64,000 nucleotides of DNA from Chara braunii (lineage: Eukaryota; Plantae; Charophyceae), in contig BFEA01000043.1 of the NCBI GenBank assembly GCA_003427395.1, positions 372,290 through 436,289 on the forward strand, written 5' to 3'. Shown here one piece after another: positions 22,480-51,589 of this stretch. The notes below the pieces were generated by a model, which made no database searches, was not told the DNA's origin, and was given only the letters and a program-made list of their open reading frames with translations. The translations under genes were made by a program, and so were the position numbers. Numbering within the stretch: the stretch's first letter is position 1; each line of letters opens with the position of its first letter.

Positions 22480-22510
<31 letters not shown>

Positions 22511-23174: not shown

Positions 23175-23205
<31 letters not shown>

Positions 23206-23865
23206 TTCACACACACACGCACACGCACATGCACACGCACACGCACATGCGCACGCACACACACATGCACACGCACACGCACATCCTCCTCCTCCTCCTC
23301 CTCCTCCTCCTCCTCCTCCNCCNCCTCCTCCTCCTCCTNCTTCTTCTTCTTCTTCTTCTTCTTCTTCTTCTTCTTCTTCTTCTTCTTCTTCTTCTTCTTC
23401 TTCGTCTGCACCCTGTTCCTGGTCTGCACACTGGTCCTGGTCTGCAGACTCTTCATCCCGATCCTGATTTGCATCCTGGTCTGCAGAATTCACCCCGATC
23501 CTGGTCTGCCCCCTGATCTGGAGACTCCGCATCCTGGTCCTGGTCTGCACCCAGGTCGGCACCCTGTGCACTGCTCCTGGTCTGCACCCAGGTCGGCACC
23601 CTGTGCACTGCTCCTGGTCTGCAGACTCTCCATCCTGACCCAGCTCTGCCCCTAGTCTGTTCTGGTCTTGAGACTGTGCACCTTGGTCCTGGTCTGCAGA
23701 CTGTCACCCTGGTCCTGGTCTGCAGACTCTCCACTCTGGTCCTGGTCTGCACCCTTATCCTGGTCTGCAAAGTCTGCGCAATGGTCCTGGTCTGCAGCTT
23801 GGTTCGGCTTCTTGTTCAGGCCTGCACCCTATTCCTGGTCTGTGCCAGGATTTATGTCTGCACAC
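23115..23865. repeat. Compound microsatellite (GCACAC)n-(CCT)n-(CTT)n followed by a cctggtctgca minisatellite
   Basis: Directly visible; it accounts for the low-complexity ORFs in the track. Confidence 0.9.
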
Positions 23866-24074
23866 TATGAACTCCCAGTGATCGAAGACTCTTTTCTGAG
23901 ATCCAAAATAGTTGAATTGGTTGTTGGGAATGCGGATCAAAAAGTTTGAAAAACACGTGAGCGCCGTGAGGAGATTTGCTATATCAATATGCAGGGGCGA
24001 ATACTACTCGCAACTTCAATGGATGCCTTGAAGCCCACAAATCCTTCAAAAAAAAAAAAAAGAAAGTTTTTTTT

Positions 24075-24139
24075 AGGGGCCAATGGGCCATGCTAATCTT
24101 CTCTGTATCATTCCAATTTTAACGAATGTCCCCAAGGAC
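24075..24139 (-). pseudogene. U6: U6 snRNA pseudogene, 3'-truncated
   Basis: Minus strand gtccttggggacattcgttaaaaattggaatgatacagagaagattagcatggcccattggcccct followed by an A run. Confidence 0.88.
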
Positions 24140-24418: not shown

Positions 24419-25139
24419 GAGGATACATTTCTTTCGAGAGAGGAGCAGCCGCATAGATTCTTTGGCTGCTACGTGGCGCATATCCGGATGGTAGACGCCT
24501 GTAACTGTTTTGAACCACCAGTGGACAGCCCATCCATTTGGAAAATTCTTTCCAGTTAAACCACCAGCTCACGTGAGCCTAAGTTGATGAAGCTACCTTC
24601 CAAGGCTTGCGAGCCTGACACTGCGCGTTTTCAAAGTGACCTGCTGCATTCACTACCGGCCCAAGCCCAAATTTAAGAGCCCTTTTCTGCCTCGGGTGAG
24701 CTGGCGGCTTAAGGCGGGACTGCGGAAAGGCTTGGTGTCTGCTTTGGAAAAAGTCGGAGGCGCCAGGCAAATCGTGTGTGACAACAGGTCGGATTGCTCA
24801 TGGCCAGGTGAAAGTCCATGTTGAAAACAAGGCTTAGGTCCACTGGCGGTTTGATAAACTGATCAAGCATTCAAACCCTGCTGGATACAGTGAATTGTAG
24901 GGGCTACGACCTATTACAAAAAGATTTGGCTCTCCCACTTTTGGTCCGTTCCTTGCTCGGAAGATGATCAAACTGACCCAACCCATGTGGCTGAGTGGTA
25001 TACACATGTAACTGATAGTAAACAGATCATGAACAATTGCAGGCAGGATCCGAGCGATACAATGATGTTAGAGGCTACTGCCTTTTAAAAGCCGAACAAA
25101 ACAAAAACGTTTGTTGAAGTGTTCCGCTCTACCAACCTG

Positions 25140-28100
25140 ATGGAGGGTGCACCGGCTGGTGTGCCCACGCCTGCAGCACTGGTCTCCCCGGTAGACACGG
25201 ACGAACCAGGACCCAATGATGTCCTTCCTGCAATCACTCAAGATCCCTCTGTTCCTGGCGCTGCCGCCACTGACCCTTCAACTGTTCCAAGTGCTGGTAT
25301 CGACCCAGGTGCCCCTGGTAACCCAGGTGCTGATGCTAGTAGGACATCCTTGTCAGAGCCAGGTGAACCTAAGGTACCCCAGCCATCTGGTGCAGAAGAT
25401 GCGACTGCCTTGGATGCCGCTGAGGGTGATGAAGTCAGTACTCCCCCACCACCAGAAGACCCAGTGGAAACGGCTCTGCGACAGTGTGTCGAGTGGGTGA
25501 AAAGCAGAATCTTCATGATAGCAAAACCTGACCTGTGGAATGAGTCAGAGCATGGCCCCGTTGCAAGGGATTTCTTGACAAGCACGGAGCATGGCACATT
25601 GTTTGTGTATGTGGAATCGTCTACCTCCTCCACATCGACTTCGACGTCGACTTCGACTTTGGCTTCGACTTTGACTTCGACTTTGGCTTCGACTTTGACT
25701 TCGACTTCGACTTCGACTTCGACTTTGACTTTGACTTCGACTTCGACTTTGACTTCGACTTCGACTTCGACTTCGACGTTGCGCTGTCAGAAAGGTCCAC
25801 CTCCCTCCGGGCCCAAAGAGGTGTTATTCTTCATCCGGGACCCTCACAGAGCTGTGACCATCGACAACGTGGATGGTCTTGTGAACTGTGCCACCATTAA
25901 AGGCCACCCCCTCGACAGCATGCAGCGCTTCATGCAGGGTGTTTTTGTGCCAGAGGTTGTGAACAACCAAGCTTGGCCAGATAACGCCAAGAAGGAGTTT
26001 ATGGGTCAGCTGCATCGGTTCATGGCGAGCCTGACGGAGTGTACGTATCATGTGAAAGGGAAAACTGTGCTGTACATCCCTCAGGAGGACCTCGAGAGCA
26101 TGACGGAATCAAGGTTAAAGAAGGACAAGGATCTTGTCCAACGTCTTGAGTCGGCACTGATCCACTGGACCAGACAAATCAAAGAGGTGGTGAATAACCA
26201 AGATAATGCGGAGCTTGGAGAAGAGGCAGGGCCGCTTGCGGAAATTGAGTTTTGGCGCAGTCGAAGCGTGGACCTTAGTGGGATTCGGGAACAGCTCAAC
26301 GATCCCAGCATCGGCCGGATAGTGGGGATTTTGGAGAAGGCCAAATCTTCCTACTTGGCACCATTTTTGAATCTCTCCAACTTGATTCAGAGAGAAGCTA
26401 TGGCTGCTGAGGACAACCTCAAATTCCTGTCCATATTTGAAGAACCTTGTCAAGCGTTGGCCGTGGCAGAGCCCAAGGTTATTCCGAACGTCCTTGTGAA
26501 AATACTGCATTGCATTAGACTGATTTGGAACATAAGCCAGTTCTACAACACTCCAGAAAGGATCACAGGGCTTCTGCGAAAGGTGAGCAACGAGATCATC
26601 AGCCGTTGTCGTGCCAAAATTTCCGTGAAGGAGATCTTTGATGGTGATGTGGAGAGGTGTCGAGAGGCCCTACGGGAGAGTATGAAGGCTGGTGAGGCTT
26701 GGAAACGAGCTTACAAAATGACAGCTGATCAGGTTGCATCTTTTGCCTCTTCGTCGTCTACTGCTGGCCCTGGCCGAGGATCCATCTCCACCACCGCAGC
26801 AACCCTCAAAAACATAACCAACATCGCTGCACCTGGTCATCCAACGAATGTTCTGGAAACCAGCAACCCATCTGCAACCCCAAATGTTGGCACGCAAAAT
26901 GGGAACAAACCGCGGCCAGGAGCAGCAGCAGGAGGGGGAGGAGATCCAGCAGTAGGGGGCCGAGCAGTGGGCCCCGTCGACTCAAGCTACGATGATGCGC
27001 AAAACCGAGCAGGGAGTGGAAGCAAAAGTGGTGCACAAGCGGGTGTGAAATCCGGTCCAGGGAGTGTGCCTTCACTTAGACTATGGGATTTTGATACGAG
27101 CAGTGTGTTTGCTCACATTGATGCCTTTGTCCAACGGTGTCGAGATCTTCTCGAGGTCTGCGACTCCCAAGAGCAATTTGCTCTAAAAAAGGACCTGCCA
27201 TGCTTTGGTGGAACGCGGGGCCCGGAGATCACAAAGAGCCTCTCAGATATCCAAGCTGCATTTCAACGGCTAGCATTCGGGCTTCAGAATTTGAGCTACA
27301 GCATTCTTGACGTCAAGAGCACGATGTGGCATGATGACTACACGCGGTTCAAGAATGGGGTAAAGGATCTAGAGGTGATGATGCAAAACGTGATAACACT
27401 GGCATTCGAGTCGGTGGCGAACGTTGCGAACAGCCTTGAGCTGTTGGATGCCTTCCAATCGATGGCCTACAGGGAGACCATAAAGAGGTGCCTTGAGAAG
27501 GTCACTGCGGACGTGCTAACCACATTTCTGGGTGAGCTGAATGGGGCAAAGAAGCATTTTGATCAGATGCGACGAAAGCCGGTCATCAATTCTACGTTTC
27601 CAAAAGGTGCTGGGGGAGCTTTGTGGGCCCAGGGTTTACGGCTTAGAATCGACAGACCTATGAACTGGTTGAATAGCTGCCTCGGTTTCCTACCTCACGT
27701 GGCGGAGCTCGATGAGTTGCAGCTGCAGCATGTTCAGATAACTTCCGCCATCGAACAGTACATTAGGAATCAGCATGTCGAATGGTTTACCTCCATTGAG
27801 CAGTCTATGCCCAAGCTCTTGGAGAACAGCCTCATGGTGCTCGACCATGACGGGACCTTGGCCGTTAACTTCGATAGGCAACTGCTGTCCCTCTTTCATG
27901 AGGCCCACTACTGGGAGCGGCTTGGTTTCGAGATCCCTGTTTTGGCCGTCGAGATCTGTGCACACAAAGAGAAGTTAAGGGTCATGCAAGAACATGTTCT
28001 GATGGTTGCCCGCGATTACAACAAGATACTGCGTTCTCTTGAACCAGCAGAGAGACAACTGTTCTCTGACAGAATCAGGTACTTGGATAAGAAGATCCAT

Positions 28101-31100
28101 CCAGGGCTTCACAGGCTTAACTGGGTTTCGAGCAAGCACCATTTGGACTATTTTGTGAAGGAGGCGCGGAAGTTCTGCCGGGAAGTTCAAGGGACCGTCT
28201 CCGACTTCAAGATGGCTCATGAGAAGGTCCTTGGCATATGCAAGCGCCTAGGTGGGACTCTGCTTATAATCATGGAAAAGAAGAAGGTTTATGAAACCTG
28301 GGAGTTTGAAGAAAAGCAGGCAGAGCATCGAGAGGTGGTCAGATCAAAGTTTGATCAAGCATACTCAGAGCTCAAGAAGACAATGGAAGGGGCATACGAA
28401 ATTTTCGCTTTTGACGGAGATGATGTGCAAAGGGAATGGGCCAGATACTCGACGAAGATTGACCGAAAAATGGAGGATGCACTGCGTCAGACGGTAAAGA
28501 AATCCTTGCAAGAGTTATCGCGTGCACTGAATGGCGATGCAAGGACAGAAGTTATTCCCATCTTCAACACGGGCGTTATACTCGACAAGGAAACAAACCG
28601 TGTGGAGTTAAAGCCGTCAGTGAGGGAGCTAGTGGGAATGATGAAGACAGTCTGCAGCGAGCTCATCACCGTTGTGAAGGCCATGCCTCGATTGGTGGAG
28701 GCACCCAGACCTCCTCGATCAGCTCCCGCAGATCTGATGCTTCCAGAACTTCTTACAATCACTTACTCCTCATTGCTAGAAGAAGAACCAGAAGGAGGAG
28801 TTCCAAACATGGTAGAGTCAGGGTCCGGCGGGCCACCAAAGGGCCCAACTAACTTACCCACCTACTACGAAATGATATCTGCAGACGAAGACTCCTCTGT
28901 GAAAATGATTACCACTATTACCAGCGGCATATCTGGCCTCTTGGAAAAAGTGCAACAGTTCCTATACTACTGGGAGAAGAAATACAAGCACATTTGGGAC
29001 CAAGACAAGGAAGCGTACATTAGACGGTACGAGAGGGCAAAGAAGACGCTGTCCGCATTCGAGGGTGACATCATGAAGTATAAGGAGCTTCAAGAGGAGA
29101 TCGAGGCCGAGGACACGAGCACCAACATGCGGTTCTTAAGGATCGACTGTGGACCTTTGAAGCAAGCCATCTGGGCACATTGTGAAGCATGGGTGTCCAA
29201 GTTCACGACGCTGCTCAACACCCTTGCCAAAACGGAGCTCGAGTCGATAAAGAGCTACATTAGCAGCAATACACAACATATGCAGTCAGCTGTGCTCAAC
29301 CTCGACATGCTAGCGGATGCCGTAAATCTCTGGAAACGGCTCAAGCAGGAGCAGCCAACGATCGAAGCGCGGTTGGAGCCCCTTGACGAGAAGTACAAAA
29401 CTTTGGAAGCATTCGAGGTGCCTGTTCCCGAGCAGGAACAGGAAATGCTCTCTGGTCTTTCGGCTGAGTGGGCAGCATTCACAGTATTACTGAGCACGAG
29501 AGAGAAGGAGCTCGAAGCAGCAAAAGAGAACTTCCGAGAGAAACTTATAAAACTGGTGGATACATTTGTCAAGGAGGTCGCAGAGCAGCGACAAGATTTC
29601 CTGGCCCGCATGCCACTTACTTCGGAGACGAGCACGGAGGCAGCGCTCGCTTTTGTTGCCGAGGAGCGGACAAAGCTGGATGCAAATCGGAAAAAGGAGC
29701 AGGATCTGAACCAGGGGCTAAACATATTCGACATGGCGCAGCCAGGATATAAAGAATCGATCGCAACGGCCAAGGATTTGGACTTGCTGGAGGCAATGTG
29801 GCAGTTGAAGAAAGATTGGGAGAATGCATACGATGGATGGAAAGGAGGCCTCTTCCGCAACCTGCAAGTAGCGGATATGGAGTCCGTTGCCCAGCAGCTT
29901 TCGAAGCGTGTGACGAAGCTTGGAAGGGATGTGAAAGCCTGGGCTGTCTGGTCAGATATGCGTGATAATCTGGACGCATTCAAGCGGACACTGCCCTTGG
30001 TAATCGATCTTCGTAACCCAGCCATGAGACCCCGTCATTGGGTACAGCTACAGGAGCACATGGGGACCACATTCGATCCGAACAGCGACGAGTTCACACT
30101 GGCCAAAGTGACGGAGCTGAGGTTCGACAAGTATGCAGAGGCTATCGGTGACTTGAGTGCCAATGCAAGTAAGGAGCTGGCCATAGAGCTGAGCATTGAG
30201 ACTCTCGGAGAGACGTGGAAAGAACTAACGCTCGACATGGTCCCCTATAAAGAGACTCACAAGGGAGTTTATAAGCTGCGTAGCACAGATGAAATATTTG
30301 CAGCATTGGAGGACAACACAGTTACCCTTTCAACGATCAAGGCAAGCAGATACTACACAGTCTTTGAGAAAGACATTAATCATTGGGAGCAAAGCCTCTC
30401 GTTGGTGTCAGAAATGATCGAAGTTGTTCTTCAGGTGCAAAGACAGTGGATGTACTTGGAGAACATATTCATTGGCTCCGAGGACATACGGAAGCAATTG
30501 CCTGCGGAGTCTACCATGTTCGATTCCGTGAATGCGAGTTTCATAGCCTCTATGAACACCCTATATGAGAGCAAGAACGTGATCAAGGGAACGCATGTGC
30601 CAGGGTTGCTTGACACATTCCTCGAAATGGAATCGAAACTGGAGAAGATACAGAAATCGCTGGAGAATTACCTTGAGAAGAAACGACAACAGTTCCCTAG
30701 GTTCTACTTCCTGTCGAGCGACGACCTGCTGGAGATTCTAGGCCAGGCGAGAGATCCGTTGAATGTGCAGCCGCATCTGAAGAAATGCTTTGAGGGTATC
30801 AAGAAGCTGGAAATGCACATCCCCGGAGAAGGGCGTAAGCATTATGAATCGACGGGGATTTTCTCTGCGGACGGGGAATACCTGCCTTTCGGCGCATCGG
30901 TGTTGACAGAGGGGAGGCCTGAGGAATGGCTGAACAAGGTGGAGGCAGCAATGTTTTCAACAACCAAGCGGCACCTGCTTAAGACGCTGGAGGAGAGTAA
31001 GGGCATGAAAAAGGAGAAGTGGTTGAAGGACTACCCTGGCCAGTGCGTCATTACCGCAGGGCAAATTATCTGGACAAACGAGTGCGAGCGTGCCTTGTTT

Positions 31101-34100
31101 GTCCCCGAAACTTCCAAAACTGCTTTGAGAAAACTCAAGAAGAGATGGATTAGCTACCTCAACAAACTTACCGCAGTAACAAGGTCTCGTTTGTCCAAGA
31201 TCGATCGACTGAAAACGGTCGCGCTTATCACAATCGAGGTACACGCAAGGGACGTGATTGACAAGCTTGCGAAGTCGGGCTGCAAGAGTGTCAACGACTT
31301 TGAGTGGAGCAGCCAGCTCCGCTTCTACTGGGATCGTGAAGCGGGGGAATGTATCATCAAACAGGTGCTCTCTGTCTTCTGGTATGGATATGAATACCAA
31401 GGCAACAATGGGAGGCTGGTGATTACCCCGCTGACGGATCGTTGCTACATGACCCTTGGTGCGGCCATGTTCACTCGGCGAGGTGGGAACCCGCTGGGAC
31501 CGGCTGGGACTGGCAAGACCGAAACTGTGAAAGACTTTGGGAAGGCCCTTGCCAGATACGTGATTGTCTTCAACTGCTCCGATGGAGTGGACTACCAAAT
31601 GACGGGCAAAATGTTCTCAGGCCTGGCACAGACCGGCGCTTGGGCTTGCTTCGACGAGTTTAATCGGATTGAAGTGGAGGTTTTGTCTGTGGTTGCATCG
31701 CAGATCGCGGCTGTGATGTCTGCCATCAAGAGTGGTGCACAGCGGTTCATCTTTGAAGGCCAAGATATCCGTCTGAACCCCGCATGTGCTATTTTCGTTA
31801 CGATGAATCCGGGGTATGCGGGGAGATCGGAACTTCCGGACAATCTGAAAGCGCTGCTGCGGCCGGTGTCCATGATGGTGCCAGACTTTGTGCTGATTGC
31901 GGAGATAATGTTATTTAGTGAGGGTTTCCAAGGAGCCAAGGTGTTGTCGAAGAAGATGATAGCCATCATGGAGCTGTCACAGCAGCAACTCTCCAAGCAA
32001 GACCATTATGATTACGGTCTGCGATCCTTTGTCATTCCCATAGCAAGAGCTGCCGGGGTGATGAAGAGGGCGGATGCAGACCAACCGGAGGAAGTGATCC
32101 TTTATCGCGCGATGAGGGACTTGATTATGCCCAAGCTAGTTTTTGGCGATATGCCGCTTTTCACTGCCCTGCTGTCGGATCTGTTCCCTGGTGTCGAGAT
32201 ACCGGTGGCTGAGAGTGGATCTCTGCAGAAGGCCATAGAGGAGGAGCTGTCGGGGTCGGGACTTCAGGTGGTCCCACCATTTGTAATGAAGATCATTCAA
32301 ATTTTCGATTGCAAGGTTGCAAGACACGGGAACATGATCGTTGGCAAAACAGGTGCTGGGAAATCTGAGGGATGGAAGACCCTGTCTAAGGCTATGGCTC
32401 GTCTGAAGAAAGAGGGTGTCGAGGACTTCGAGCGTGTCCACGTTTATCCTATCAATCCCCTGTCTCTTTCCGTCGATGAGCTTTATGGCTCTTTTGACGA
32501 GGCTACCCACGAGTGGACGGATGGTGTTCTGGCACGAATCATGCGAACGACGTGCAAGGACGAGAGCCCTGACCAGAAGTGGATCTTGTTCGATGGGCCA
32601 GTCGACACGTTTTGGATTGAATCCATGAACAGCCTCCTTGACGACAACAAAATTTTGACTCTCCTAAGTGGAGAAAGAATCTCCATGCCTTCTCAGGTTT
32701 CCCTTCTCTTCGAGGTTGAAGACTTGTCCCAGGCATCACCAGCCACCGTTAGTCGCGCAGGGATGATTTATATGAACGTCGAAAGCTTGGGTCCATGGCC
32801 TTACTTACGGTCTTGGTTGAGAAACAAGGCTGCGGCTGGAGCCGACCAACTTCTGATCGAGACCATAGGAAAGATGGCGGAGAAGTACATCGATGCTACC
32901 CAGGAATTCAGGCGCCGGGAGTGCCAAGAGCTTGTGAGAGTCGACGACCTAAATGCCGTCATCTCCTTTTGCACGTTATTCGACTCCTTGTGCACTCTGG
33001 AAAATGGAGTGAATCCCGCCGACCCAGATACATATGTGGCAATGATGGAGTTGACCTTCTTATTCAGCTTGATATGGTCTTTGTGTGCCAGTGCTGGAGA
33101 GGAAGGGAGGAAAAAGATGGACATGTTCCTGAGGGAACAAGATACCAGGTACCCACCCACGGAGACCGTCTACGAGTACTTTGTGGATCCCAAGAAGAAA
33201 GCCTGGGCACCTTGGGAGGAGAAGATATCAGGAGGGTACAAGCCTGCACCCGATGTTCCCTTTTTCAAAATTCGGGTGCCAACAATCGACACAGTGAGGG
33301 CGAAGTTCGTGGTAAGGGCCCTTGTGCTGTCCAACAGGCACACCTTGGTGGTTGGTAATGTTGGCGTGGGAAAGACCATAATCGCCCAGAGCGTTCTCTA
33401 TTCCCTGCCGGAAGGAAGGTCCAGAATGATCATCAACTTCAGTGCACAGACAAGTGCACAGTCTTTGCAGGAAACGATCGAGGGAAAACTGGAGAAGCGA
33501 ACCAAGGGAGTTTTCGCTCCGACGGGAGGAAAGCGACTTGTGTGCTTCATTGATGACATGAATATGCCAAGGAAGAGCCAGTTTGGTTTCATGCCGCCGT
33601 TGGAACTTCTGAAATTTTGGGTAGATAACGGGTTCTGGTACGACAGGCAGAAGCAGGAGGTAAAACATGTCAAAGATATGCAGTTGCTGGCAGCCATGGC
33701 CCCTCCTGGGGGAGGGAGGAACCAATTCAGCATGAGAATACAAGCTTGCTTTAGCCTTATCAACGTGGCCAATCCGAGTGAGACGCAGCTGAAGAGGATC
33801 TTTGGGACCATGCTGAATGCCAAGCTGGTGGACTTCGATGATGAGATCAAGCCTCTGGGAGATGCATTAACGCAGGCGTGCATAGATGTGTACAGGACAG
33901 TCTCTGTGGAGCTGCTGCCCACACCAAGCAAGAGCCATTACGTTTTCAATATGAGGGATCTGGGGAAGGTTGTGCAGGGAATATTGCAGGCAACACGGGG
34001 TTTCTACGACAGCAAGGAGTCTATGCTTCAACTGCTGTGCCACGAGTGCTTTCGCATATTTGGCGATCGCATGTGGGACAAGGCAGACAGAGCATGGCTG

Positions 34101-37100
34101 GAGAACTTGCTGGACGAAAGGCTAACCACCGTCTTTGGCATCAGCTGGAAGACATTGTTCGGCGACGACCCCATGCCCGTCTTTGTAAGCTTTATGCGAC
34201 CGGGGATGGACAATCCTCCCTACGAGCCCTTTACGGACATGATCGCCGTCAAGGAGCTCCTTCAAGAGAGGCTAGAAGACTATGGACTAGAACCAGGACT
34301 ACATCCCATGGACCTCGTTCTCTTCCGGGATGCAGTGGAGCATGTGTGTCGCATCCACCGGATTTTGGCACAGCCCCATGGCAATGCACTGCTGGCCGGA
34401 GTTGGCGGCAGTGGGCGGAAGAGCTTGGCGAGGCTCTCAGCTTTTGTCACAGAGCAGAAGGTATTTTCTATTGAGATTGCTAAGACCTACCGCCTTGGCG
34501 AGTTCCATGAAGACCTCAAGAATCTTTATCGGCAAGCAGGTGGTGGCGACGCCCCCAAGCCCACAACGTTCCTGTTCGACGACACACAGATAGTCCTCGA
34601 AACCTTCTTGGAAGACATCAACAACATCCTTACCAGTGGGGAAGTACCCAATCTCTTCAGCAAAGAGGAGGCACAAGCGCTCTGTGATGAGTGCCGCCCT
34701 GCAGCCCAAAAGGCACATGCGGGAGACACCAATGATGCCATATTTGGCTTTTTCATCGAACGGGTTCGCACAAACCTTCACATTGTCTTATGCCTCAGTC
34801 CTGTCGGCGAAACTTTCCGGAACAGGCTGAGAATGTTTCCGGGGCTGGTGAACTGCACCACAATAGACTGGTTCGTAGAGTGGCCTTCGGATGCACTGCT
34901 GGAGGTGGCCACCAAGTTGATGCATTCGGAAGACTTGGGAACCGCAGAGGTGAAGGCGAATATCTGCTGTGTCTTCGTCACTGCTCACCTGTCGGTGTCT
35001 GAAATGTCCACTTCGATGCTCTCTCAACTGAAGCGCCATAACTACGTTACTCCGAGCAACTACTTAGAATTCAATAAAGGGTATAGCCTATTGCTGAAGG
35101 AAAAGAGGAAAGAGCTGGGGGATAATGCTGCCAAGCTCCGGGGAGGGCTGCAGAAGTTGGACGAAACTCGACAGCAGGTAGCAAGTATGCAAATCGTGTG
35201 CCAAGAAAAAAAGGCCGTAGTCGCGAAGGCAAAACGGGACTGCGAAGAGCTCCTCGTGGAGATCGTGCAGGAGAAACGGCTTGTGGACGAGCAAGAAAAG
35301 CAGGTTAATGCTGAGGCCAGCAAGATCGAGAAGGAGACCGAAGAGTGCAACAAAATTGCGACGGAATGCCAGAAGGAGCTTGAGAAGGCACTTCCCGCTC
35401 TTCAGGCAGCCGAGGAAGCACTTAACGTACTGACGAAGAAGGACCTGGCAGAGGTCAAAGCATACCCCAAGCCTCCTGCCCTTGTGGAGTTGACGTTGGC
35501 GGCTGTCATGACTGTACTGAAGAGACCGACGACGTGGGAGGAGTCGAAGCGGCAACTGGGCGACCCAGGCTTTCTAGAGAAACTGCTCAGATATGACAAG
35601 GACCTGCTGGTGGACTCCCTGCTCAAGAAAATCAACAAATATACATCAAACCCGGATTTCACACCTGAAACAGTGGGAAAGGTGTCGTTGGCCGCGAAAG
35701 GACTATGTCTTTGGGTCCGGGCAATGGAAGTGTATGGATATGTAGCGAAGGATGTCAGCCCGAAGCGGGCAAAGCTTAAGAATGCGACTGACACGCTTGC
35801 TAAGAAACAAGCAGCACTTCAGGCAGCAAAAAACCAGCTTTTGGAGGTCGTGGCCAAAGTGCAAGCTCTGAAAGAGAAATACGATGTAAGCACAGCAAAC
35901 AAGGAGGCACTGCAGCAAGAGTTGGACGAGTTGGAGGTGAAATTGCAAAGGGCGGAGAAGTTGGTCTTTGGGCTTGCGGGTGAGAAAGTACGGTGGCAAA
36001 CAAGCATCGAGAGACTTCAGAACCAACTACGAATGCTTCCTGGTGACTGTCTTGTCGCATCTGCATTCCTCTCCTATGCGGGCCCATTCCCAAGCGAGTA
36101 CCGGGACATGCTAGTTCGGCAGACCTGGCTTTCACAGGTCCGCAAGCTGGCGATTCCCTGTTCCGCCGATTTTGATTTTGCATTCTTCCTTGCCAACGCC
36201 AGCGATGTGCGGGACTGGAATATCCAGGGACTCCCGGCGGATGGTTTCTCGACTGAAAACGGGGTCATTGTCACCCGAGGACGAAGATGGCCACTCATGG
36301 TGGACCCGCAGGGCCAAGCCAACAAGTGGGTGAAGAGCATGGAGGCGAGCCGTCGTCTCAAGGTTGTCGATTTGCAGGCGTCCGACCTATTGAGGACGAT
36401 GGAAAATGCGATTATGTTTGGAAATCCGGTCCTTCTCCAGGACATCCTAGAGGAGATAGATCCTGCTTTAGATCCAATACTGGGTAAGACCTTCATGAAA
36501 AGAGGGAACCAGATTCTGATAAAACTTGGCGATAAGGAGATCGACTACAATACAGATTTCCGACTCTATATTACGACAAAGCTAAGCAATCCTCACTTCA
36601 CACCGGAGGTCTCTGCAAAAGCTACCGTTGTCAATTTTTCGGTGAAAGAACAAGGACTGGAGGCGCAGCTGCTGAATCTGGTAGTTCAGAAGGAGAGGCC
36701 CGACTTAGACAAGCAGAAAAATGAGCTTGTCATTAAGGTGGCCACGGGGAAAAGAACTCAAGCACACCTTGAAGATGAGATTTTGCGGATGTTGTCCACT
36801 GCCACGGGGTCTCTTTTAGATAACGTGGAGCTTATAGACACCCTGGACAAGTCAAAGACGACATGGGAGGAGGTAAACGAGTCACTGAAGATCTCGGAAG
36901 ACACGGCAAAAAAGATCGAGATTGCCAGCGCCGCATACAAGCCAAGTGCGGTGCGTTCATCGATTCTGTTTTTCGTTCTGATTGAGCTGTCTGCAATAGA
37001 TCCCATGTACCAGTTTTCACTTGATGCGTACACAGACCTCTTCCTCATATCAATCCAAAAGAGTCCGAAGGCGGACAGTGTGGCAGAGAGGATAAAGAGC

Positions 37101-39395
37101 CTCAATGATTTTCACACGTACGCAGTGTACAAGTACACAGCACGTGCCCTATTCGAGCGGCACAAGCTGTTGCTCTCTCTACAGATTTGCACACGAGTAT
37201 TACAGGCTGGGAATCAGATGAATAGCGAAGAATGGCAGTTCTTTCTACGGGGAGGCACAGTCCTGGACAGAACGTCTCAGTCCCCGAACCCGGGGAAAAG
37301 CTGGATTTCGGAGCAGGCATGGGACCACATCACCGAGCTTGACAAGCTACCTCAGTTCAAAGGAATCGTTTCAAGCTTTGAACAGAACTTAGGTCTGTGG
37401 GAGAGCTGGTATCGGTCATCCGAGCCAGAGGGTGCCGAACTTCCATCCGAATGGGAGAGTAAATGCAGCGAGCTCCAGCGGATGATCCTCGTGCGCTGCT
37501 TACGACAGGATCGGGTTATATTTGCTTCAACAGGCTACGTGGCAAACAGTTTAGGACGTCGTTTTGTGGAGCCACCGGTGCTTGACCTTGGTGAGACCTA
37601 TGATGACTCAGTCCCTGCTTCCCCTCTGATTTTCGTCTTATCTGCAGGTGTGGATCCCACAAGCAGCCTGAAGCAGTTAGCTGGACAAAAGAACATGAGT
37701 GAACGTTTTTTCGCAGTCGCGCTTGGTCAGGGCCAGGCGCCCATCGCTACGAAGTGCATCGAGGATGGCGTGCGCGACGGCAATTGGGTTTTCCTGGCAA
37801 ACTGCCACCTGATGACCGGATGGCTACCTGTGCTGGACAAGATAGTGGACGGCCTGGAAGCCCGAAAACCGCATGCCAGCTTTCGGCTATGGCTATCCAG
37901 CTCGCCAAACCCCAAGTTCCCCATTGGAATACTACAACGAGGAATCAAGATGACAACTGAGCCACCCAAGGGCCTGCGAGCGAATTTGCTTCGACTTTAC
38001 AACGCCACGACTGAGGAGGACTTCAACCAGTGCCGTGCTCAGCAGAAGTACCAGAAGCTCTTCTTCTCCCTCAGCTACTTCCACAGTGTTTTGCTGGAGA
38101 GAAAAAAGTTCGGGATGCTCGGTTTCAACGTCCAGTACAACTTCAATGACACTGATTTTCAAGTCTCCAACGACCTTTTGAAGTCTTATCTGGATTCCTA
38201 CGAGGAAACACCCTTCACTGCCCTCAAGTACCTCATTTCCGAGGCCAACTACGGTGGTCGAGTCACGGATGAGATGGACCGTAGAGTTCTCATCAGCTAC
38301 CTCAACCAGTTCTACTGCGAGGAAACCATCTCCACTCCTAATTATCCTCTATCCCCGCTCCCCTATTACTATGTTCCCGACAACGGTGGCCTTCAAAGTC
38401 ACCGGGACTATATCCTCTCTCTCCCAACTGTTGATAGACCTGAGGCATTTGGTCAGCACCCGAACGCTGACATTGCCTTTCAGATTGCGGACACAAGGAC
38501 TGTTCTTGAGAGCATCGTGAGCCTGCAGCCACGACTAGCATCAGGGACACGTGGCATGCAGAGAGAAGACGTCGTCATGAACCTCATTACCGACCTATTT
38601 CAGCAGGTTCCAGAGCCACTGAACCTGGAGGCGATTCAACGACACAAGCAAGATGATCCGTCCGCCCTCCACGTGGTCTTGTTCCAAGAGATCGAACGGT
38701 ACAATACACTGCTCTTGGCTGTCCGTCACGACTGTATGGAGCTTCAGAAAGGCATCCGTGGAATTGTGTTGATGTCATCAGAATTGGAAGCCATGTTCTC
38801 CGCCCTTTACGATAATAGGGTCCCTGCAATGTGGCTCAAGTGTTACCCCTCTCTTAGACCACTGGGCCCATGGATGAGAGACCTGGTTCAACGAATCATC
38901 GAGCTGAACCAGTGGGCCGCGAAGACGTATCCCATAGTCTATTGGTTAGGCGGGTTCACTTACCCGACTGGTTTTTTAACGGCAGTCCTACAGACAACGG
39001 CGCGACGAATGGTGGTTCCTATTGACACGTTGTCTTGGGACTTCACGGTAATCATCGACAATGAGAAGGATATAATTGCGCCACCGAGAGACGGAGTACT
39101 AGTCAAGGGACTGTTCTTGGAAGGTGCTGGCTGGGATTACCAGAATGGTTACCTCACTGAGCCTGAACCCATGGAGCTCATTGTACAGATGCCTATCATA
39201 CATTTCAGGCCGGTAGAGAGCAAGAAGAAAGCCCACAAGGGTACCTACGCTTGCCCGCTCTACATCTACCCGAAGAGGACGGGCACCAGAGAGCGCCCCA
39301 GCTACATGCTAAGCGTCGATCTCAAGACTGGCACGGCCGATGTCGACCATTGGATCAAGAGGGGGACAGCACTTCTGCTCTCTCTCGCAGACTGA
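25140..39395 (+). CDS. DNAH2: Axonemal dynein heavy chain, inner-arm I1/f beta type (Chlamydomonas DHC10/IDA2-like, vertebrate DNAH2-like); single uninterrupted ORF of about 4751 aa
   Basis: Four AAA P-loops: GPAGTGKT (31497-31520), GKTGAGKS (32343-32366), GNVGVGKT (33354-33377), GVGGSGRKS (from 34398). Also FPRFYFLSSDDLLEIL, LVITPLTDRCY, FNCSDG, FDEFNRI, a coiled-coil stalk with microtubule-binding domain, and C-terminal HWIKRGTALLL. The long DHC_N1-type tail and GGNPLGPAGTGKTETVKDFGKALA fit I1-beta as I recall it. First ATG is at 25140; the track starts at an upstream GTG (25119). Confidence 0.93.
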   Translation: MEGAPAGVPTPAALVSPVDTDEPGPNDVLPAITQDPSVPGAAATDPSTVPSAGIDPGAPGNPGADASRTSLSEPGEPKVPQPSGAEDATALDAAEGDEVSTPPPPEDPVETALRQCVEWVKSRIFMIAKPDLWNESEHGPVARDFLTSTEHGTLFVYVESSTSSTSTSTSTSTLASTLTSTLASTLTSTSTSTSTLTLTSTSTLTSTSTSTSTLRCQKGPPPSGPKEVLFFIRDPHRAVTIDNVDGLVNCATIKGHPLDSMQRFMQGVFVPEVVNNQAWPDNAKKEFMGQLHRFMASLTECTYHVKGKTVLYIPQEDLESMTESRLKKDKDLVQRLESALIHWTRQIKEVVNNQDNAELGEEAGPLAEIEFWRSRSVDLSGIREQLNDPSIGRIVGILEKAKSSYLAPFLNLSNLIQREAMAAEDNLKFLSIFEEPCQALAVAEPKVIPNVLVKILHCIRLIWNISQFYNTPERITGLLRKVSNEIISRCRAKISVKEIFDGDVERCREALRESMKAGEAWKRAYKMTADQVASFASSSSTAGPGRGSISTTAATLKNITNIAAPGHPTNVLETSNPSATPNVGTQNGNKPRPGAAAGGGGDPAVGGRAVGPVDSSYDDAQNRAGSGSKSGAQAGVKSGPGSVPSLRLWDFDTSSVFAHIDAFVQRCRDLLEVCDSQEQFALKKDLPCFGGTRGPEITKSLSDIQAAFQRLAFGLQNLSYSILDVKSTMWHDDYTRFKNGVKDLEVMMQNVITLAFESVANVANSLELLDAFQSMAYRETIKRCLEKVTADVLTTFLGELNGAKKHFDQMRRKPVINSTFPKGAGGALWAQGLRLRIDRPMNWLNSCLGFLPHVAELDELQLQHVQITSAIEQYIRNQHVEWFTSIEQSMPKLLENSLMVLDHDGTLAVNFDRQLLSLFHEAHYWERLGFEIPVLAVEICAHKEKLRVMQEHVLMVARDYNKILRSLEPAERQLFSDRIRYLDKKIHPGLHRLNWVSSKHHLDYFVKEARKFCREVQGTVSDFKMAHEKVLGICKRLGGTLLIIMEKKKVYETWEFEEKQAEHREVVRSKFDQAYSELKKTMEGAYEIFAFDGDDVQREWARYSTKIDRKMEDALRQTVKKSLQELSRALNGDARTEVIPIFNTGVILDKETNRVELKPSVRELVGMMKTVCSELITVVKAMPRLVEAPRPPRSAPADLMLPELLTITYSSLLEEEPEGGVPNMVESGSGGPPKGPTNLPTYYEMISADEDSSVKMITTITSGISGLLEKVQQFLYYWEKKYKHIWDQDKEAYIRRYERAKKTLSAFEGDIMKYKELQEEIEAEDTSTNMRFLRIDCGPLKQAIWAHCEAWVSKFTTLLNTLAKTELESIKSYISSNTQHMQSAVLNLDMLADAVNLWKRLKQEQPTIEARLEPLDEKYKTLEAFEVPVPEQEQEMLSGLSAEWAAFTVLLSTREKELEAAKENFREKLIKLVDTFVKEVAEQRQDFLARMPLTSETSTEAALAFVAEERTKLDANRKKEQDLNQGLNIFDMAQPGYKESIATAKDLDLLEAMWQLKKDWENAYDGWKGGLFRNLQVADMESVAQQLSKRVTKLGRDVKAWAVWSDMRDNLDAFKRTLPLVIDLRNPAMRPRHWVQLQEHMGTTFDPNSDEFTLAKVTELRFDKYAEAIGDLSANASKELAIELSIETLGETWKELTLDMVPYKETHKGVYKLRSTDEIFAALEDNTVTLSTIKASRYYTVFEKDINHWEQSLSLVSEMIEVVLQVQRQWMYLENIFIGSEDIRKQLPAESTMFDSVNASFIASMNTLYESKNVIKGTHVPGLLDTFLEMESKLEKIQKSLENYLEKKRQQFPRFYFLSSDDLLEILGQARDPLNVQPHLKKCFEGIKKLEMHIPGEGRKHYESTGIFSADGEYLPFGASVLTEGRPEEWLNKVEAAMFSTTKRHLLKTLEESKGMKKEKWLKDYPGQCVITAGQIIWTNECERALFVPETSKTALRKLKKRWISYLNKLTAVTRSRLSKIDRLKTVALITIEVHARDVIDKLAKSGCKSVNDFEWSSQLRFYWDREAGECIIKQVLSVFWYGYEYQGNNGRLVITPLTDRCYMTLGAAMFTRRGGNPLGPAGTGKTETVKDFGKALARYVIVFNCSDGVDYQMTGKMFSGLAQTGAWACFDEFNRIEVEVLSVVASQIAAVMSAIKSGAQRFIFEGQDIRLNPACAIFVTMNPGYAGRSELPDNLKALLRPVSMMVPDFVLIAEIMLFSEGFQGAKVLSKKMIAIMELSQQQLSKQDHYDYGLRSFVIPIARAAGVMKRADADQPEEVILYRAMRDLIMPKLVFGDMPLFTALLSDLFPGVEIPVAESGSLQKAIEEELSGSGLQVVPPFVMKIIQIFDCKVARHGNMIVGKTGAGKSEGWKTLSKAMARLKKEGVEDFERVHVYPINPLSLSVDELYGSFDEATHEWTDGVLARIMRTTCKDESPDQKWILFDGPVDTFWIESMNSLLDDNKILTLLSGERISMPSQVSLLFEVEDLSQASPATVSRAGMIYMNVESLGPWPYLRSWLRNKAAAGADQLLIETIGKMAEKYIDATQEFRRRECQELVRVDDLNAVISFCTLFDSLCTLENGVNPADPDTYVAMMELTFLFSLIWSLCASAGEEGRKKMDMFLREQDTRYPPTETVYEYFVDPKKKAWAPWEEKISGGYKPAPDVPFFKIRVPTIDTVRAKFVVRALVLSNRHTLVVGNVGVGKTIIAQSVLYSLPEGRSRMIINFSAQTSAQSLQETIEGKLEKRTKGVFAPTGGKRLVCFIDDMNMPRKSQFGFMPPLELLKFWVDNGFWYDRQKQEVKHVKDMQLLAAMAPPGGGRNQFSMRIQACFSLINVANPSETQLKRIFGTMLNAKLVDFDDEIKPLGDALTQACIDVYRTVSVELLPTPSKSHYVFNMRDLGKVVQGILQATRGFYDSKESMLQLLCHECFRIFGDRMWDKADRAWLENLLDERLTTVFGISWKTLFGDDPMPVFVSFMRPGMDNPPYEPFTDMIAVKELLQERLEDYGLEPGLHPMDLVLFRDAVEHVCRIHRILAQPHGNALLAGVGGSGRKSLARLSAFVTEQKVFSIEIAKTYRLGEFHEDLKNLYRQAGGGDAPKPTTFLFDDTQIVLETFLEDINNILTSGEVPNLFSKEEAQALCDECRPAAQKAHAGDTNDAIFGFFIERVRTNLHIVLCLSPVGETFRNRLRMFPGLVNCTTIDWFVEWPSDALLEVATKLMHSEDLGTAEVKANICCVFVTAHLSVSEMSTSMLSQLKRHNYVTPSNYLEFNKGYSLLLKEKRKELGDNAAKLRGGLQKLDETRQQVASMQIVCQEKKAVVAKAKRDCEELLVEIVQEKRLVDEQEKQVNAEASKIEKETEECNKIATECQKELEKALPALQAAEEALNVLTKKDLAEVKAYPKPPALVELTLAAVMTVLKRPTTWEESKRQLGDPGFLEKLLRYDKDLLVDSLLKKINKYTSNPDFTPETVGKVSLAAKGLCLWVRAMEVYGYVAKDVSPKRAKLKNATDTLAKKQAALQAAKNQLLEVVAKVQALKEKYDVSTANKEALQQELDELEVKLQRAEKLVFGLAGEKVRWQTSIERLQNQLRMLPGDCLVASAFLSYAGPFPSEYRDMLVRQTWLSQVRKLAIPCSADFDFAFFLANASDVRDWNIQGLPADGFSTENGVIVTRGRRWPLMVDPQGQANKWVKSMEASRRLKVVDLQASDLLRTMENAIMFGNPVLLQDILEEIDPALDPILGKTFMKRGNQILIKLGDKEIDYNTDFRLYITTKLSNPHFTPEVSAKATVVNFSVKEQGLEAQLLNLVVQKERPDLDKQKNELVIKVATGKRTQAHLEDEILRMLSTATGSLLDNVELIDTLDKSKTTWEEVNESLKISEDTAKKIEIASAAYKPSAVRSSILFFVLIELSAIDPMYQFSLDAYTDLFLISIQKSPKADSVAERIKSLNDFHTYAVYKYTARALFERHKLLLSLQICTRVLQAGNQMNSEEWQFFLRGGTVLDRTSQSPNPGKSWISEQAWDHITELDKLPQFKGIVSSFEQNLGLWESWYRSSEPEGAELPSEWESKCSELQRMILVRCLRQDRVIFASTGYVANSLGRRFVEPPVLDLGETYDDSVPASPLIFVLSAGVDPTSSLKQLAGQKNMSERFFAVALGQGQAPIATKCIEDGVRDGNWVFLANCHLMTGWLPVLDKIVDGLEARKPHASFRLWLSSSPNPKFPIGILQRGIKMTTEPPKGLRANLLRLYNATTEEDFNQCRAQQKYQKLFFSLSYFHSVLLERKKFGMLGFNVQYNFNDTDFQVSNDLLKSYLDSYEETPFTALKYLISEANYGGRVTDEMDRRVLISYLNQFYCEETISTPNYPLSPLPYYYVPDNGGLQSHRDYILSLPTVDRPEAFGQHPNADIAFQIADTRTVLESIVSLQPRLASGTRGMQREDVVMNLITDLFQQVPEPLNLEAIQRHKQDDPSALHVVLFQEIERYNTLLLAVRHDCMELQKGIRGIVLMSSELEAMFSALYDNRVPAMWLKCYPSLRPLGPWMRDLVQRIIELNQWAAKTYPIVYWLGGFTYPTGFLTAVLQTTARRMVVPIDTLSWDFTVIIDNEKDIIAPPRDGVLVKGLFLEGAGWDYQNGYLTEPEPMELIVQMPIIHFRPVESKKKAHKGTYACPLYIYPKRTGTRERPSYMLSVDLKTGTADVDHWIKRGTALLLSLAD

Positions 39396-39442
39396 TCGAG
39401 CTGCATCCTCTCACAGTCATGCACTCTAACGGGCACTTCGTT

Positions 39443-39700
39443 TTTTTTTTTTTGTTTTTTTTGTTTTTTTTTTTTTCCAGATAACAGAGAGTCTTGGCTC
39501 TGGCTCCTACCATTCTGGGGAGCGACAGTCCGGTTCCTTTCCCCCAGCAAGTCAATTAGGAATACATAAGAGACTCACACACGCTCCCCCCCATTAAGGC
39601 TGGGAGGCCCGAGTAGACGGCATTGATTACTTCCCTGAGGAAATATGTACCACCTCTCACCCCTGCCTAAGTTGCCCTCTGCTAATTTCGCCTACCAGTC
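39443..39700 (-). mobile_element. Short 5'-truncated LINE or SINE-like insertion with poly(A)
   Basis: Poly(T) on +, conserved LINE 3' tail, 17-bp TSD ctaacgggcacttcgtt at 39426-39442 and 39701-39717. Confidence 0.85.
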
Positions 39701-39722
39701 CTAACGGGCACTTCGTTAAAAG

Positions 39723-51586: not shown

Positions 51587-51589
51587 GCT

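What the first reader, a model, noticed from the sequence alone, without database searches (positions are those of the whole stretch)
25140..39395. Apparently intronless 14.3-kb axonemal dynein heavy chain in a TE-saturated region
Seen: one stop-free frame of about 4750 codons with all motor domains and no recognisable TE insertion, although the flanks are almost entirely repeats. Known: axonemal DHC genes of Chlamydomonas, bryophytes and animals are normally highly multi-exonic. Inference: a giant retrogene that replaced its parent, or wholesale RT-mediated intron loss, kept under purifying selection for sperm motility. Caveat: no + strand poly(A) or TSD is visible; the T tract after the stop belongs to an antisense LINE tail.
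Basis: partly seen in the sequence, partly recalled or inferred. Interest (0 to 1): 0.8.

Follow-up and report, generated by a model that had tools for sequence, protein, structure and literature searches.

The report
Intronless inner-arm dynein gene in Chara
A stonewort-type alga encodes one of its sperm-flagellum motor proteins (4,751 amino acids) in a single uninterrupted 14.3-kb coding exon, while the same gene has 48-70 introns in a liverwort and two green algae. This is an unusually large example of complete intron loss, which is a known process.

Summary
Window 25140-39395 (+) is one stop-free frame of 4,751 codons with every dynein heavy chain domain. The other five frames carry 110-235 stops each.

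**What it is:** the orthologue of the I1/f inner-arm 1-beta heavy chain (Chlamydomonas DHC10, human DNAH2). In a tree it is sister to land plants and its branch length is ordinary, so it was inherited vertically.

**Conservation:** it keeps 96.6% of the columns that are invariant in 11 orthologues.

**Comparison with orthologues:**
- Marchantia has 70 introns, Volvox 61 and Bryopsis 48.
- The Diphasiastrum gene spans 238 kb.
- Eleven Marchantia intron positions are shared exactly with a chlorophyte, so they are ancestral. All are absent here, without indels.
- Only a compact-genome marine picoalga also lacks introns.

**Transcripts:** contigs from three 2018 runs, probably RNA, lie on 25737-30599 with no gaps or mismatches. 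They run unspliced through the one long lineage-specific insert.

**Retrogene marks:** no + strand poly(A) or target-site duplication was found.

**Reading:** a functional gene stripped of all coding introns through reverse transcripts. Whether this happened in place or by retroposition with loss of the parent is unresolved. I could not test whether other Chara dynein genes share this state. This is a new, very large member of a known kind, of moderate interest. I found no earlier report of it by this scan.

The parts
25140..39395 (+). Complete single-exon coding sequence (4,751 codons plus stop) of the I1/f inner-arm dynein 1-beta heavy chain (DHC10/DNAH2 orthologue)
   Evidence: ORF list. 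Pfam domain set. Best solved-structure match is Chlamydomonas 1-beta at 6414 bits, against 2601 bits for the 4,625-aa chain 8glv_Cn, which I take from its length and rank to be the partner I1-alpha heavy chain (its molecule name is only 'AAA+ ATPase domain-containing protein'). Tree.
25140..25487 (+). Pro/Ala/Asp-rich N-terminal extension with no counterpart in most orthologues. Homology with orthologue N-termini starts at about aa 117.
   Evidence: MAFFT alignment. No transcript contig covers 25200-25736, so use of the ATG at 25140 is inferred.
25635..25777 (+). In-frame hexanucleotide microsatellite (TCGACT, 23.8 copies) encoding a Ser/Thr/Leu repeat
   Evidence: Tandem Repeats Finder. It is an insertion relative to all orthologues.
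26760..27083 (+). Lineage-specific low-complexity insert of about 105 aa, and the only plausible candidate for an in-frame intron. It is retained, not spliced, in contigs of runs X1 and X2; a 205-nt X3 contig covers its first 180 nt.
   Evidence: Alignment. X1 record 4 (26727-28081) and X2 record 10 (26721-27277) span it with 0 gaps; X3 record 18 (26736-26940) is colinear over the part it covers.
27075..30977 (+). Tail and linker region (DHC_N1 best stretch, DYH2-5-8 coiled coil, DHC_N2)
   Evidence: Pfam. Coordinates converted from the 4,758-aa numbering.
31383..32366 (+). AAA1, the main hydrolytic site. Walker A GPAGTGKT lies at 31497-31520.
   Evidence: Pfam AAA_6, E 3.7e-146. P-loop scan.
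35133..36134 (+). Microtubule-binding stalk
   Evidence: Pfam MT, E 3.7e-52.
38490..39380 (+). Dynein C-terminal domain
   Evidence: Pfam Dynein_C, E 1.2e-100.
39437..41918 (-). Antisense LINE material starting 42 nt after the stop: two successive T-tract-headed 3' tails (39437 and 39721), then minus-strand ORFs, one with a zf-RVT domain. The gene's 3' UTR must lie in or end before this.
   Evidence: Sequence. Repeat families D4 and D5 shared with tails at 47795, 51521 and 53340. zf-RVT at 40174-40803.
22237..24139 (.). Upstream flank with two U6 snRNA retrocopies (22237-22321 +, 24053-24139 -) and long microsatellites. No host gene was recognised.
   Evidence: Rfam. Tandem repeats. Sequence.

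Best explanation
This is the functional, vertically inherited gene for the beta heavy chain of the two-headed inner-arm dynein I1/f of the sperm flagellum, in a charophycean alga. Earlier scan notes name it Chara braunii, and my tree agrees with that position. Its whole 14.3-kb coding sequence is one exon.

The ancestor of this lineage and land plants had an intron-rich gene. At least 11 intron positions are shared between Marchantia and chlorophytes, and probably dozens more existed. All of them were removed precisely on the lineage leading to this alga.

The most likely agent is reverse transcription of the spliced mRNA in germline cells. The spermatid both expresses the gene and passes on its genome. 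Two routes could follow. In the first, the cDNA recombined with the resident gene; I slightly favour this because it keeps the promoter and leaves no poly(A) or target-site duplication. In the second, the cDNA was inserted elsewhere and the parent gene was later lost.

Once the gene had no introns, every transposon insertion in it would be disruptive. That explains a clean 14.3-kb island in a repeat-rich region.

Shown here: the ORF, the orthology, the conservation, the intron-rich orthologues, the precise absence of introns, and colinear contigs. Inferred: that the colinear runs are RNA, that reverse transcription was involved, which route was taken, and that expression is sperm-specific.
For: - **ORF and domains:**
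- **Orthology:** the Chlamydomonas 1-beta heavy chain scores 6414 bits and DNAH2 about 4700 bits, against at most 3545 bits for any other dynein class.
- **Tree:** the protein is sister to five embryophytes with SH-aLRT 100. Its end branch is 0.26 against a median of 0.24.
- **Conservation:** 1358 of 1406 columns invariant in 11 orthologues are kept (96.6%). Leaving out each orthologue in turn gives 94.2-98.5%. The AAA1 P-loop is intact.
- **Orthologue gene spans:** Marchantia 36.6 kb, Diphasiastrum 238 kb, Volvox 30.8 kb, Bryopsis 26.1 kb.
- **Exact exon reconstruction:** 70, 61 and 48 introns.
- **Ancestral introns:** 11 Marchantia positions are shared in column and phase with a chlorophyte, against 0.28 expected by chance.
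- **Precise absence:** 166 of 179 intron positions are gap-free within 3 aa either side, and nearly all of the rest have gaps shared by both rows.
- **Colinear contigs:** three runs cover 25737-30599 with 0 mismatches and 0 gaps. Cover fades towards the 5' end and is nil (X2, X3) or faint (X1) on the upstream flank (24600-25139), as expected of poly(A)-selected RNA from a 14-kb message. Each run holds only 17-23 Mb of contigs.
- **Reverse transcriptase sources and retroposed cellular RNAs in the same window:** Gypsy RT, LINE zf-RVT ORFs, three U6 copies and one U2 copy, and A or T tracts that abut at least three of the four snRNA copies.
Against: - The kind of runs X1-X3 is not on record. If they are DNA, they support the assembly but not expression.
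- One raw oligo-dT RNA run of 2026 gave a single read, so expression in that sample is near nil. Its tissue is unknown.
- Only 25737-30599 was checked against reads.
- UTR introns, the transcription start and the poly(A) site are unknown.
- Nothing positively marks a reverse-transcript origin, and precise loss is circumstantial.
- I could not search the rest of this genome for a second copy. Nor could I check whether other dynein or flagellar genes there are also intronless, so 'exceptional within the genome' is not established.
- No protein from this organism for this locus was found in the protein collection. How the public annotation models the locus is therefore unknown.
Confidence: 0.7

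Rival explanations
1. Orphan retrogene. A full-length spliced mRNA of about 14.5 kb was reverse-transcribed and inserted at a new site by LINE (or LTR-element) machinery. It acquired a promoter there, and the intron-bearing parent was later lost. This is one of the two routes left open inside the best explanation, so its odds overlap with that one.
For: - The coding sequence has no introns, and their absence is precise.
- The gene sits alone among retroelements, with no recognised host neighbour within about 25 kb on either side.
- The same window holds four snRNA retrocopies, so retroposition of cellular RNAs in trans happens in this genome.
- No second I1-beta-like protein above 70% identity turned up in the protein collection. 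This is weak, because this organism's proteins may not be in it.
Against: - There is no + strand A tract within 11.7 kb downstream of the stop, and no target-site duplication was seen.
- LINE retrocopies are usually 5'-truncated, so a full-length 14-kb copy that also gained a sperm-specific promoter would be exceptional (general knowledge).
- These marks could have decayed or been displaced by the later LINE insertions, so the absence is not decisive.
Confidence: 0.25
2. Young processed retrocopy, possibly untranscribed, of an intron-bearing parent that still exists elsewhere. The colinear RNA contigs would then come from the parent's spliced mRNA.
For: Spliced mRNA from a near-identical parent would also lie colinearly on a retrocopy (logic). 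The rest of the genome could not be searched.
Against: - A copy young enough to show 0 mismatches over about 4.8 kb in three runs should still carry its poly(A) tail and target-site duplication, and neither is present.
- The 3' flank has since received at least two diverged LINE tails, which implies age.
- A 14.3-kb frame with no stop, and 96.6% of invariant columns kept, argues for selection on this copy.
Confidence: 0.06
3. Stepwise loss of individual introns by genomic deletion, with no reverse transcript involved.
For: Intron numbers vary widely among green lineages (70, 61, 48 and 0), so turnover in this gene is common.
Against: Dozens of independent deletions would each need to be exact to the base. 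No indel is seen at 166 of 179 positions, and nearly all the remaining gaps are shared.
Confidence: 0.05
4. Artefact or foreign origin: cDNA contamination of the assembly, a contaminant alga with intron-poor genes, or horizontal transfer from such an alga.
For: An orthologue on a marine-metagenome contig is likewise a single ORF, so intron-free donors exist.
Against: - The ORF is joined to retroelement-rich flanks on both sides with no N between 23339 and 40644.
- The tree puts it sister to land plants, not with the picoalga or other chlorophytes.
- The best identity to anything in the collection is 70%.
Confidence: 0.02

Closest known systems
Chlamydomonas reinhardtii DHC10 (I1/f inner-arm dynein 1-beta heavy chain) and human DNAH2
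   Same: Same orthogroup. Best match in solved structures is 8glv chain Co at 6414 bits, followed by DNAH2 (9fqr, 8j07). It has the same complete domain order, about 64% identity to green-algal orthologues, and an intact AAA1 P-loop.
   Different: The coding sequence is a single exon, while the volvocine orthologue examined has 61 introns. It also has about 230 extra low-complexity residues in the tail: an N-terminal extension, a Ser/Thr microsatellite and a 105-aa insert.
Marchantia polymorpha I1-beta dynein gene (P0022; 71 exons in 36.6 kb)
   Same: It belongs to the sister group (land plants) of the window protein among the genes whose structure could be read. It has the same length class and domains.
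   Different: It has 70 introns with a median length of 230 nt, against none here. Eleven of its intron positions are shared with chlorophytes and so predate the split from this alga's lineage.
'Orphan' retrogenes and reverse-transcript-mediated intron loss (for example Ciomborowska et al. 2013, PMC3548309; the Fink cDNA-recombination model, cited from general knowledge)
   Same: An intronless derivative of an intron-rich ancestral gene, present as the only detectable copy, conserved, and probably expressed in the male germ line.
   Different: No poly(A), target-site duplication or relocation was shown. The size is far above typical retrogenes, at 14.3 kb of coding sequence and dozens of introns removed at once or in series.
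Intronless 4/1-like gene of Chara braunii (Morozov and Solovyev 2019, PMC6374339; 2023 preprint 10.1101/2023.12.28.573512)
   Same: A published case in the same species: a gene lacks all introns while the orthologues of other streptophyte algae and of land plants have them.
   Different: That gene is small and plant-specific. This one is a 4,751-codon ancient eukaryotic motor gene.
Intron-free I1-beta orthologue on a marine-metagenome contig (P0004, locus L004)
   Same: The same gene as one uninterrupted ORF, 13,125 nt.
   Different: It lies in a compact genome, with neighbouring genes 135-250 nt away, where intron poverty is probably genome-wide. The gene here lies in a repeat-rich region of a genome whose other genes are reported to have long introns (earlier scan notes, not checked by me).

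Membership tests
I1/f inner-arm dynein beta heavy chain (DHC10/DNAH2 orthogroup) | Complete dynein heavy chain architecture: tail (DHC_N1), linker (DHC_N2), six AAA modules, stalk, C-terminal domain | tested here: met
   All Pfam domains are present in order and above their cut-offs.
I1/f inner-arm dynein beta heavy chain (DHC10/DNAH2 orthogroup) | Closer to 1-beta/DNAH2 than to any other heavy-chain class | tested here: met
   1-beta scores 6414 bits and DNAH2 4686-4756 bits. The next class scores at most 3545 bits, and DNAH10 scores about 2550 bits. All named top hits are 'Dynein-1 subspecies f' or DNAH2.
I1/f inner-arm dynein beta heavy chain (DHC10/DNAH2 orthogroup) | Placement among orthologues follows the species tree (vertical descent) | tested here: met
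   Sister to embryophytes with SH-aLRT 100. Mesostigma plus Chlorokybus and the chlorophytes form separate groups. The tree held orthologues only, with no paralogues.
I1/f inner-arm dynein beta heavy chain (DHC10/DNAH2 orthogroup) | Catalytic AAA1 Walker A motif intact and invariant residues conserved | tested here: met
   GPAGTGKT at aa 2120. 96.6% of 1406 invariant columns are kept.
I1/f inner-arm dynein beta heavy chain (DHC10/DNAH2 orthogroup) | Assembles with the 1-alpha heavy chain, IC140 and IC138 in the axoneme of motile flagella | not testable with these tools
   This needs proteomics or cryo-ET of spermatozoid axonemes. Lucas and Geisler 2022 (PMC9237703) report that charophytes encode DHC1 and DHC10 orthologues.
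Processed retrogene | Lacks the introns of its parent or orthologues | tested here: met
   0 introns against 70, 61 and 48. Their absence is precise.
Processed retrogene | Poly(A) tract at the 3' end of the copied mRNA | tested here: not met
   No + strand A tract lies between 39396 and 51080. The T tracts belong to antisense LINE tails.
Processed retrogene | Target-site duplications flanking the insert | tested here: inconclusive
   None is evident by eye in the sequence next to the ORF. The transcript ends are unknown and later insertions may have displaced the true edges.
Processed retrogene | Location differs from the parental or ancestral locus; parent present or demonstrably lost | not testable with these tools
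   The rest of this genome and those of sister charophytes could not be searched. The protein collection held no second copy.
Reverse-transcript-mediated intron loss (cDNA recombination) | Exact removal of introns with no change to flanking codons | tested here: met
   166 of 179 positions are gap-free within 3 aa either side. Nearly all of the other 13 have gaps shared by both rows.
Reverse-transcript-mediated intron loss (cDNA recombination) | Gene expressed in germline cells and a reverse transcriptase source available | tested here: inconclusive
   RT-bearing Gypsy and LINE copies and snRNA retrocopies lie in the window. Germline (spermatid) expression is inferred from the family's role. 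The runs holding the transcript have no recorded tissue.

The most novel reading that the evidence does not exclude
The intronless state may not be a one-off. Giant sperm-expressed genes of Charophyceae (dynein heavy chains and other flagellar genes) may have been systematically stripped of introns. Two things would drive this. The spermatid both transcribes these genes and transmits the genome in a cell rich in LINE and Gypsy reverse transcriptase. And in a transposon-bloated genome with 10-kb introns, a 70-intron gene would be too long to transcribe during the short, synchronous spermatogenesis. This gene would then be the largest known product of a germline-expression-driven intron purge.
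Probability: 0.15. Interest if true: 0.7.

Novelty: new member of a known kind. Interest (0 to 1): 0.45.

Why it matters
Dynein heavy chains are among the longest and most intron-rich conserved genes of eukaryotes. A 14.3-kb version with no coding introns, in a repeat-rich genome where other genes are reported to keep long introns, would be an extreme case of complete intron loss.

It gives a concrete test bed for three questions:
- How far can reverse-transcript-mediated intron loss or retroposition reach in transcript length?
- Does expression in the male germ line bias genes towards intron loss outside animals?
- Does a transposon-saturated genome select for intron-free architecture in very long genes?

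It also has a practical use. No protein from this locus was found in the protein collection searched here, so the single ORF gives a clean full-length sequence for studies of charophyte sperm axonemes.

Tried and rejected
- **Looking for the organism's own annotated protein or a second copy.** I searched with the whole protein, then a 1,500-aa C-terminal piece, then a 300-aa piece. No hit exceeded 70% identity. The public model of this locus, and the existence of a paralogue, therefore stay unknown.
- **Supplement of Lucas and Geisler 2022,** for the Chara DHC10 accession: not held.
- **The Chara genome paper** (Cell 2018): not held. I found no quotable genome-wide figure for introns per gene.
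- **Earlier scan notes on other dynein or flagellar genes of this genome:** none.
- **Raw oligo-dT RNA run X4:** one read, uninformative.
- **In-frame intron hypothesis for 26760-27083:** rejected, because contigs of two runs cross it unspliced and a third covers its first part colinearly.
- **Alternative start at Met126:** rejected, because homology with orthologue N-termini begins upstream of it.
- **Horizontal transfer or a contaminant:** rejected by the tree and by the contiguous flanks.
- **Inverted-repeat scan of the 5' flank:** nothing convincing.
- **Bacterial promoter/terminator scan of the 3' flank:** empty, and not relevant to a eukaryote.
- **Selaginella gene structure:** the protein is not on record in the contig index.
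- **Orthologue exon structures:** these were rebuilt inside a script by matching each stored protein to its own locus.
Full report
**1. Observation**

The six-frame ORF list gives one ORF at 25119..39395 on the + strand. The first ATG is at 25140 and the stop at 39393-39395, which makes 4,751 codons. The other five frames of the same 14.3 kb contain 110-235 stop codons each, so the open frame is not chance.

Pfam finds the complete dynein heavy chain set in the right order: DHC_N1, the DYH2-5-8 coiled coil, DHC_N2, AAA_6, Dynein_AAA_lid, AAA_7, AAA_8, the MT stalk, AAA_9, Dynein_heavy, AAA_lid_11 and Dynein_C.

No N lies between 23339 and 40644. The ORF and both junctions with its flanks therefore belong to one contiguous piece of assembly.

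**2. Identity**

Against all solved structures, the best match is the Chlamydomonas 'dynein-1-beta heavy chain, flagellar inner arm I1 complex' (8glv chain Co, 6414 bits). Mammalian DNAH2 follows at 4686-4756 bits. Every other heavy-chain class scores 3545 bits or less. This includes the 4,625-aa chain 8glv_Cn at 2601 bits, which I take from its length and rank to be the partner I1-alpha chain, and DNAH10 at about 2550 bits.

In the protein collection the best hits are green-lineage orthologues at 57-70% identity:
- Mesostigma 70% over part of the query
- Nephroselmis 65%
- Chlorokybus 64%
- Diphasiastrum 62%
- Marchantia 59%

Many of these are named 'Dynein-1, subspecies f'.

A maximum-likelihood tree of 20 orthologues places the window protein as sister to five embryophytes, with SH-aLRT 100. 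Mesostigma plus Chlorokybus, and the chlorophytes, form separate groups. The end branch is 0.26 against a median of 0.24. That is the position expected of a charophycean alga. Earlier notes of this scan name the genome Chara braunii. I did not verify the species independently.

Lucas and Geisler 2022 (PMC9237703) already list a DHC10 orthologue in Chara braunii. The presence of the gene is therefore known. Its exon structure is not discussed there, and I found no paper that describes it.

**3. Is it intact and constrained?**

Of 1406 alignment columns invariant in 11 orthologues, this protein keeps 1358 (96.6%). When each orthologue is left out in turn, the figure ranges from 94.2% to 98.5%. 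The AAA1 Walker A motif GPAGTGKT is present.

The only segments without counterparts in orthologues are low-complexity:
- the first 116 residues
- an in-frame (TCGACT)n microsatellite at 25635-25777
- a stretch of about 105 aa at 26760-27083
- 12 aa at 28746-28781

From residue 1215 to the end, the protein is colinear with all orthologues. No transposon fragment is embedded in it.

**4. Are orthologues multi-exonic?**

| Orthologue | Gene span | Introns |
|---|---|---|
| Marchantia | 36.6 kb | 70 |
| Diphasiastrum | 238 kb | not read (no DNA returned) |
| Volvox reticuliferus | 30.8 kb | 61 |
| Bryopsis | 26.1 kb | 48 |
| Marine-metagenome picoalga (P0004, L004) | 13,125-nt single ORF | 0 |

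The coding sequences of the first four are about 13.1-13.6 kb. I rebuilt the exact exon chains by matching each stored protein to its own locus through GT/GC-AG junctions. Every residue was accounted for.

Together these genes have 150 distinct intron positions, and 149 of them fall on residues aligned to the window protein. Eleven Marchantia positions coincide in column and phase with a chlorophyte intron, against 0.28 expected by chance (maximum 3 in 2000 trials). Given the tree, these eleven were present in the common ancestor of this alga and land plants and were lost here.

At 166 of 179 intron positions the alignment is gap-free for 3 residues on either side. Nearly all the others have gaps shared by both rows. 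The introns are therefore absent exactly, without scars.

The marine picoalga is the one intron-free orthologue. Its contig is compact, with neighbouring genes 135-250 nt away, so intron poverty there is probably a genome-wide trait.

**5. Transcript evidence**

One look-up of public runs and one laying of reads were allowed. I gave 6,000 letters.

Three runs of 2018 come from one sample. Their kind is not recorded, they hold 17-23 Mb of contigs each, and their longest contigs are 9-11.5 kb. They contain 39-82% of the sampled words of 25000-31000.

Laid on 24600-30599, their contigs are colinear from 25737 to the end of the stretch, with no mismatch, no indel and no joint inside the ORF. Contigs of two runs cross the 26760-27083 insert unspliced: X1 record 4 covers 26727-28081 and X2 record 10 covers 26721-27277. 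A 205-nt X3 contig (26736-26940) is colinear over its first part.

I read these runs as RNA for three reasons:
- A contig set of about 20 Mb from a genome in the gigabase range would not cover a given single-copy 5 kb by chance.
- Cover is nil in two runs and faint in the third over the 540 nt of upstream flank that was laid (24600-25139), and no contig crosses from the ORF into it.
- Cover fades towards the 5' end, as expected for a poly(A)-selected 14-kb message.

This is inference. If the runs are DNA, they confirm the assembly instead.

A raw oligo-dT RNA run of 2026 gave one read, so the gene is close to silent in that sample. Its tissue is unknown.

The stretch 25200-25736 had no cover in any run, so use of the ATG at 25140 is not confirmed. 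Homology with orthologue N-termini starts at about residue 117, upstream of the next Met at residue 126. The start must therefore lie in the first 116 codons.

**6. Flanks and retrogene hallmarks**

The stop is followed after 42 nt by a T tract (39437-39478), and a second T tract lies at 39721-39740. Both are followed by sequence shared with three further T-tract-headed ends at 47795, 51521 and 53340 (families D4 and D5). Minus-strand ORFs with the zf-RVT domain of LINE ORF2 lie just beyond two of these (40174-40803 and 51538-52374).

No A tract on the + strand lies between the stop and 51080. I saw no target-site duplication.

Upstream lie microsatellites and two U6 copies. The window holds three U6 copies and one U2 copy in all, and at least three of the four abut an A tract, or a T tract on the opposite strand. 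They look like LINE-made retrocopies of cellular RNAs.

A Gypsy pol lies at 14552-17061.

**7. Interpretation**

The best-supported reading is a functional, vertically inherited I1-beta gene whose coding introns were all removed on the charophycean lineage.

Exact removal of dozens of introns points to a spliced RNA intermediate rather than to repeated genomic deletions. Two routes fit:
- **Recombination of a long cDNA with the resident gene.** This keeps the promoter and leaves no poly(A) or duplication.
- **Retroposition to a new site followed by loss of the parent** (an 'orphan retrogene').

The absence of retrogene marks, and the rarity of full-length 14-kb retrocopies, make me lean to the first. 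Later LINE insertions next to the stop could have displaced such marks, however, and I could not test synteny or search for a parental relic.

A very young retrocopy of a surviving parent is unlikely. It should still carry its tail and duplications, and diverged LINE tails have since accumulated beside it, yet the contigs match this locus with zero mismatches.

The clean state of the ORF amid repeats needs no special mechanism. Without introns, every insertion is disruptive and is removed by selection.

**8. What remains open**

- Are this organism's other dynein and flagellar genes also intron-free? I could not reach the rest of the genome.
- Other genes of this genome are reported by earlier agents to have introns of 10-11 kb and to be spliced. 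I did not check those notes.
- One published case, the 4/1-like gene, shows that complete lineage-specific intron loss has happened in Chara braunii before.

**9. Verdict**

Intron loss and orphan retrogenes are known kinds. This is a new and unusually large member of them. Interest is moderate. It would rise if the state proves general for sperm-expressed giant genes.

Noticed in passing
window 22237-22321 (+), 24053-24139 (-), 44168-44268 (-), 61402-61509 (-): Three U6 copies and one truncated U2 snRNA copy reach Rfam gathering scores within 64 kb. At least three abut A tracts, or T tracts on the opposite strand, so they look like LINE-made retrocopies of cellular RNAs. This suggests strong trans-retroposition activity in this genome.
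   Followed up: partly
window 25635-25777: An in-frame hexanucleotide microsatellite (TCGACT, about 24 copies) encodes a Ser/Thr/Leu repeat inside the dynein tail. It is absent from all orthologues and may vary in length between individuals.
   Followed up: partly
window 39425-39480 and 39700-39745: Both antisense LINE tails next to the stop codon are preceded by nearly the same 17-nt string ahead of the T tract. This is either part of the element's 3' end beyond its poly(A), or a sign that the tail region was duplicated.
   Followed up: no
L004:3001-16125: A marine-metagenome contig (ENA ERZ907913) carries the I1-beta orthologue as one 13,125-nt ORF in a compact gene neighbourhood. In the tree it branches at the base of the chlorophytes.
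   Followed up: partly
window 14552-18745 (-): Gypsy-type pol genes (protease, RT, RNase H, integrase zinc domain) lie in adjacent minus-strand ORFs. Scaffold gaps (N runs) at 12250-13139 and 20533-21297 flank the element's region.
   Followed up: no
window 25140-39395: No protein from this organism matching this locus was found in the protein collection at 165-525 aa or at 825-8,300 aa. The public annotation may lack the gene, fragment it or mis-model it.
   Followed up: partly
window 24755-25094: One 241-nt contig of run X1 lies on the minus strand just upstream of the start codon. It has an opposite-strand joint (24755/24937) and loose ends. It is probably a transcribed repeat and not the dynein 5' UTR.
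   Followed up: no
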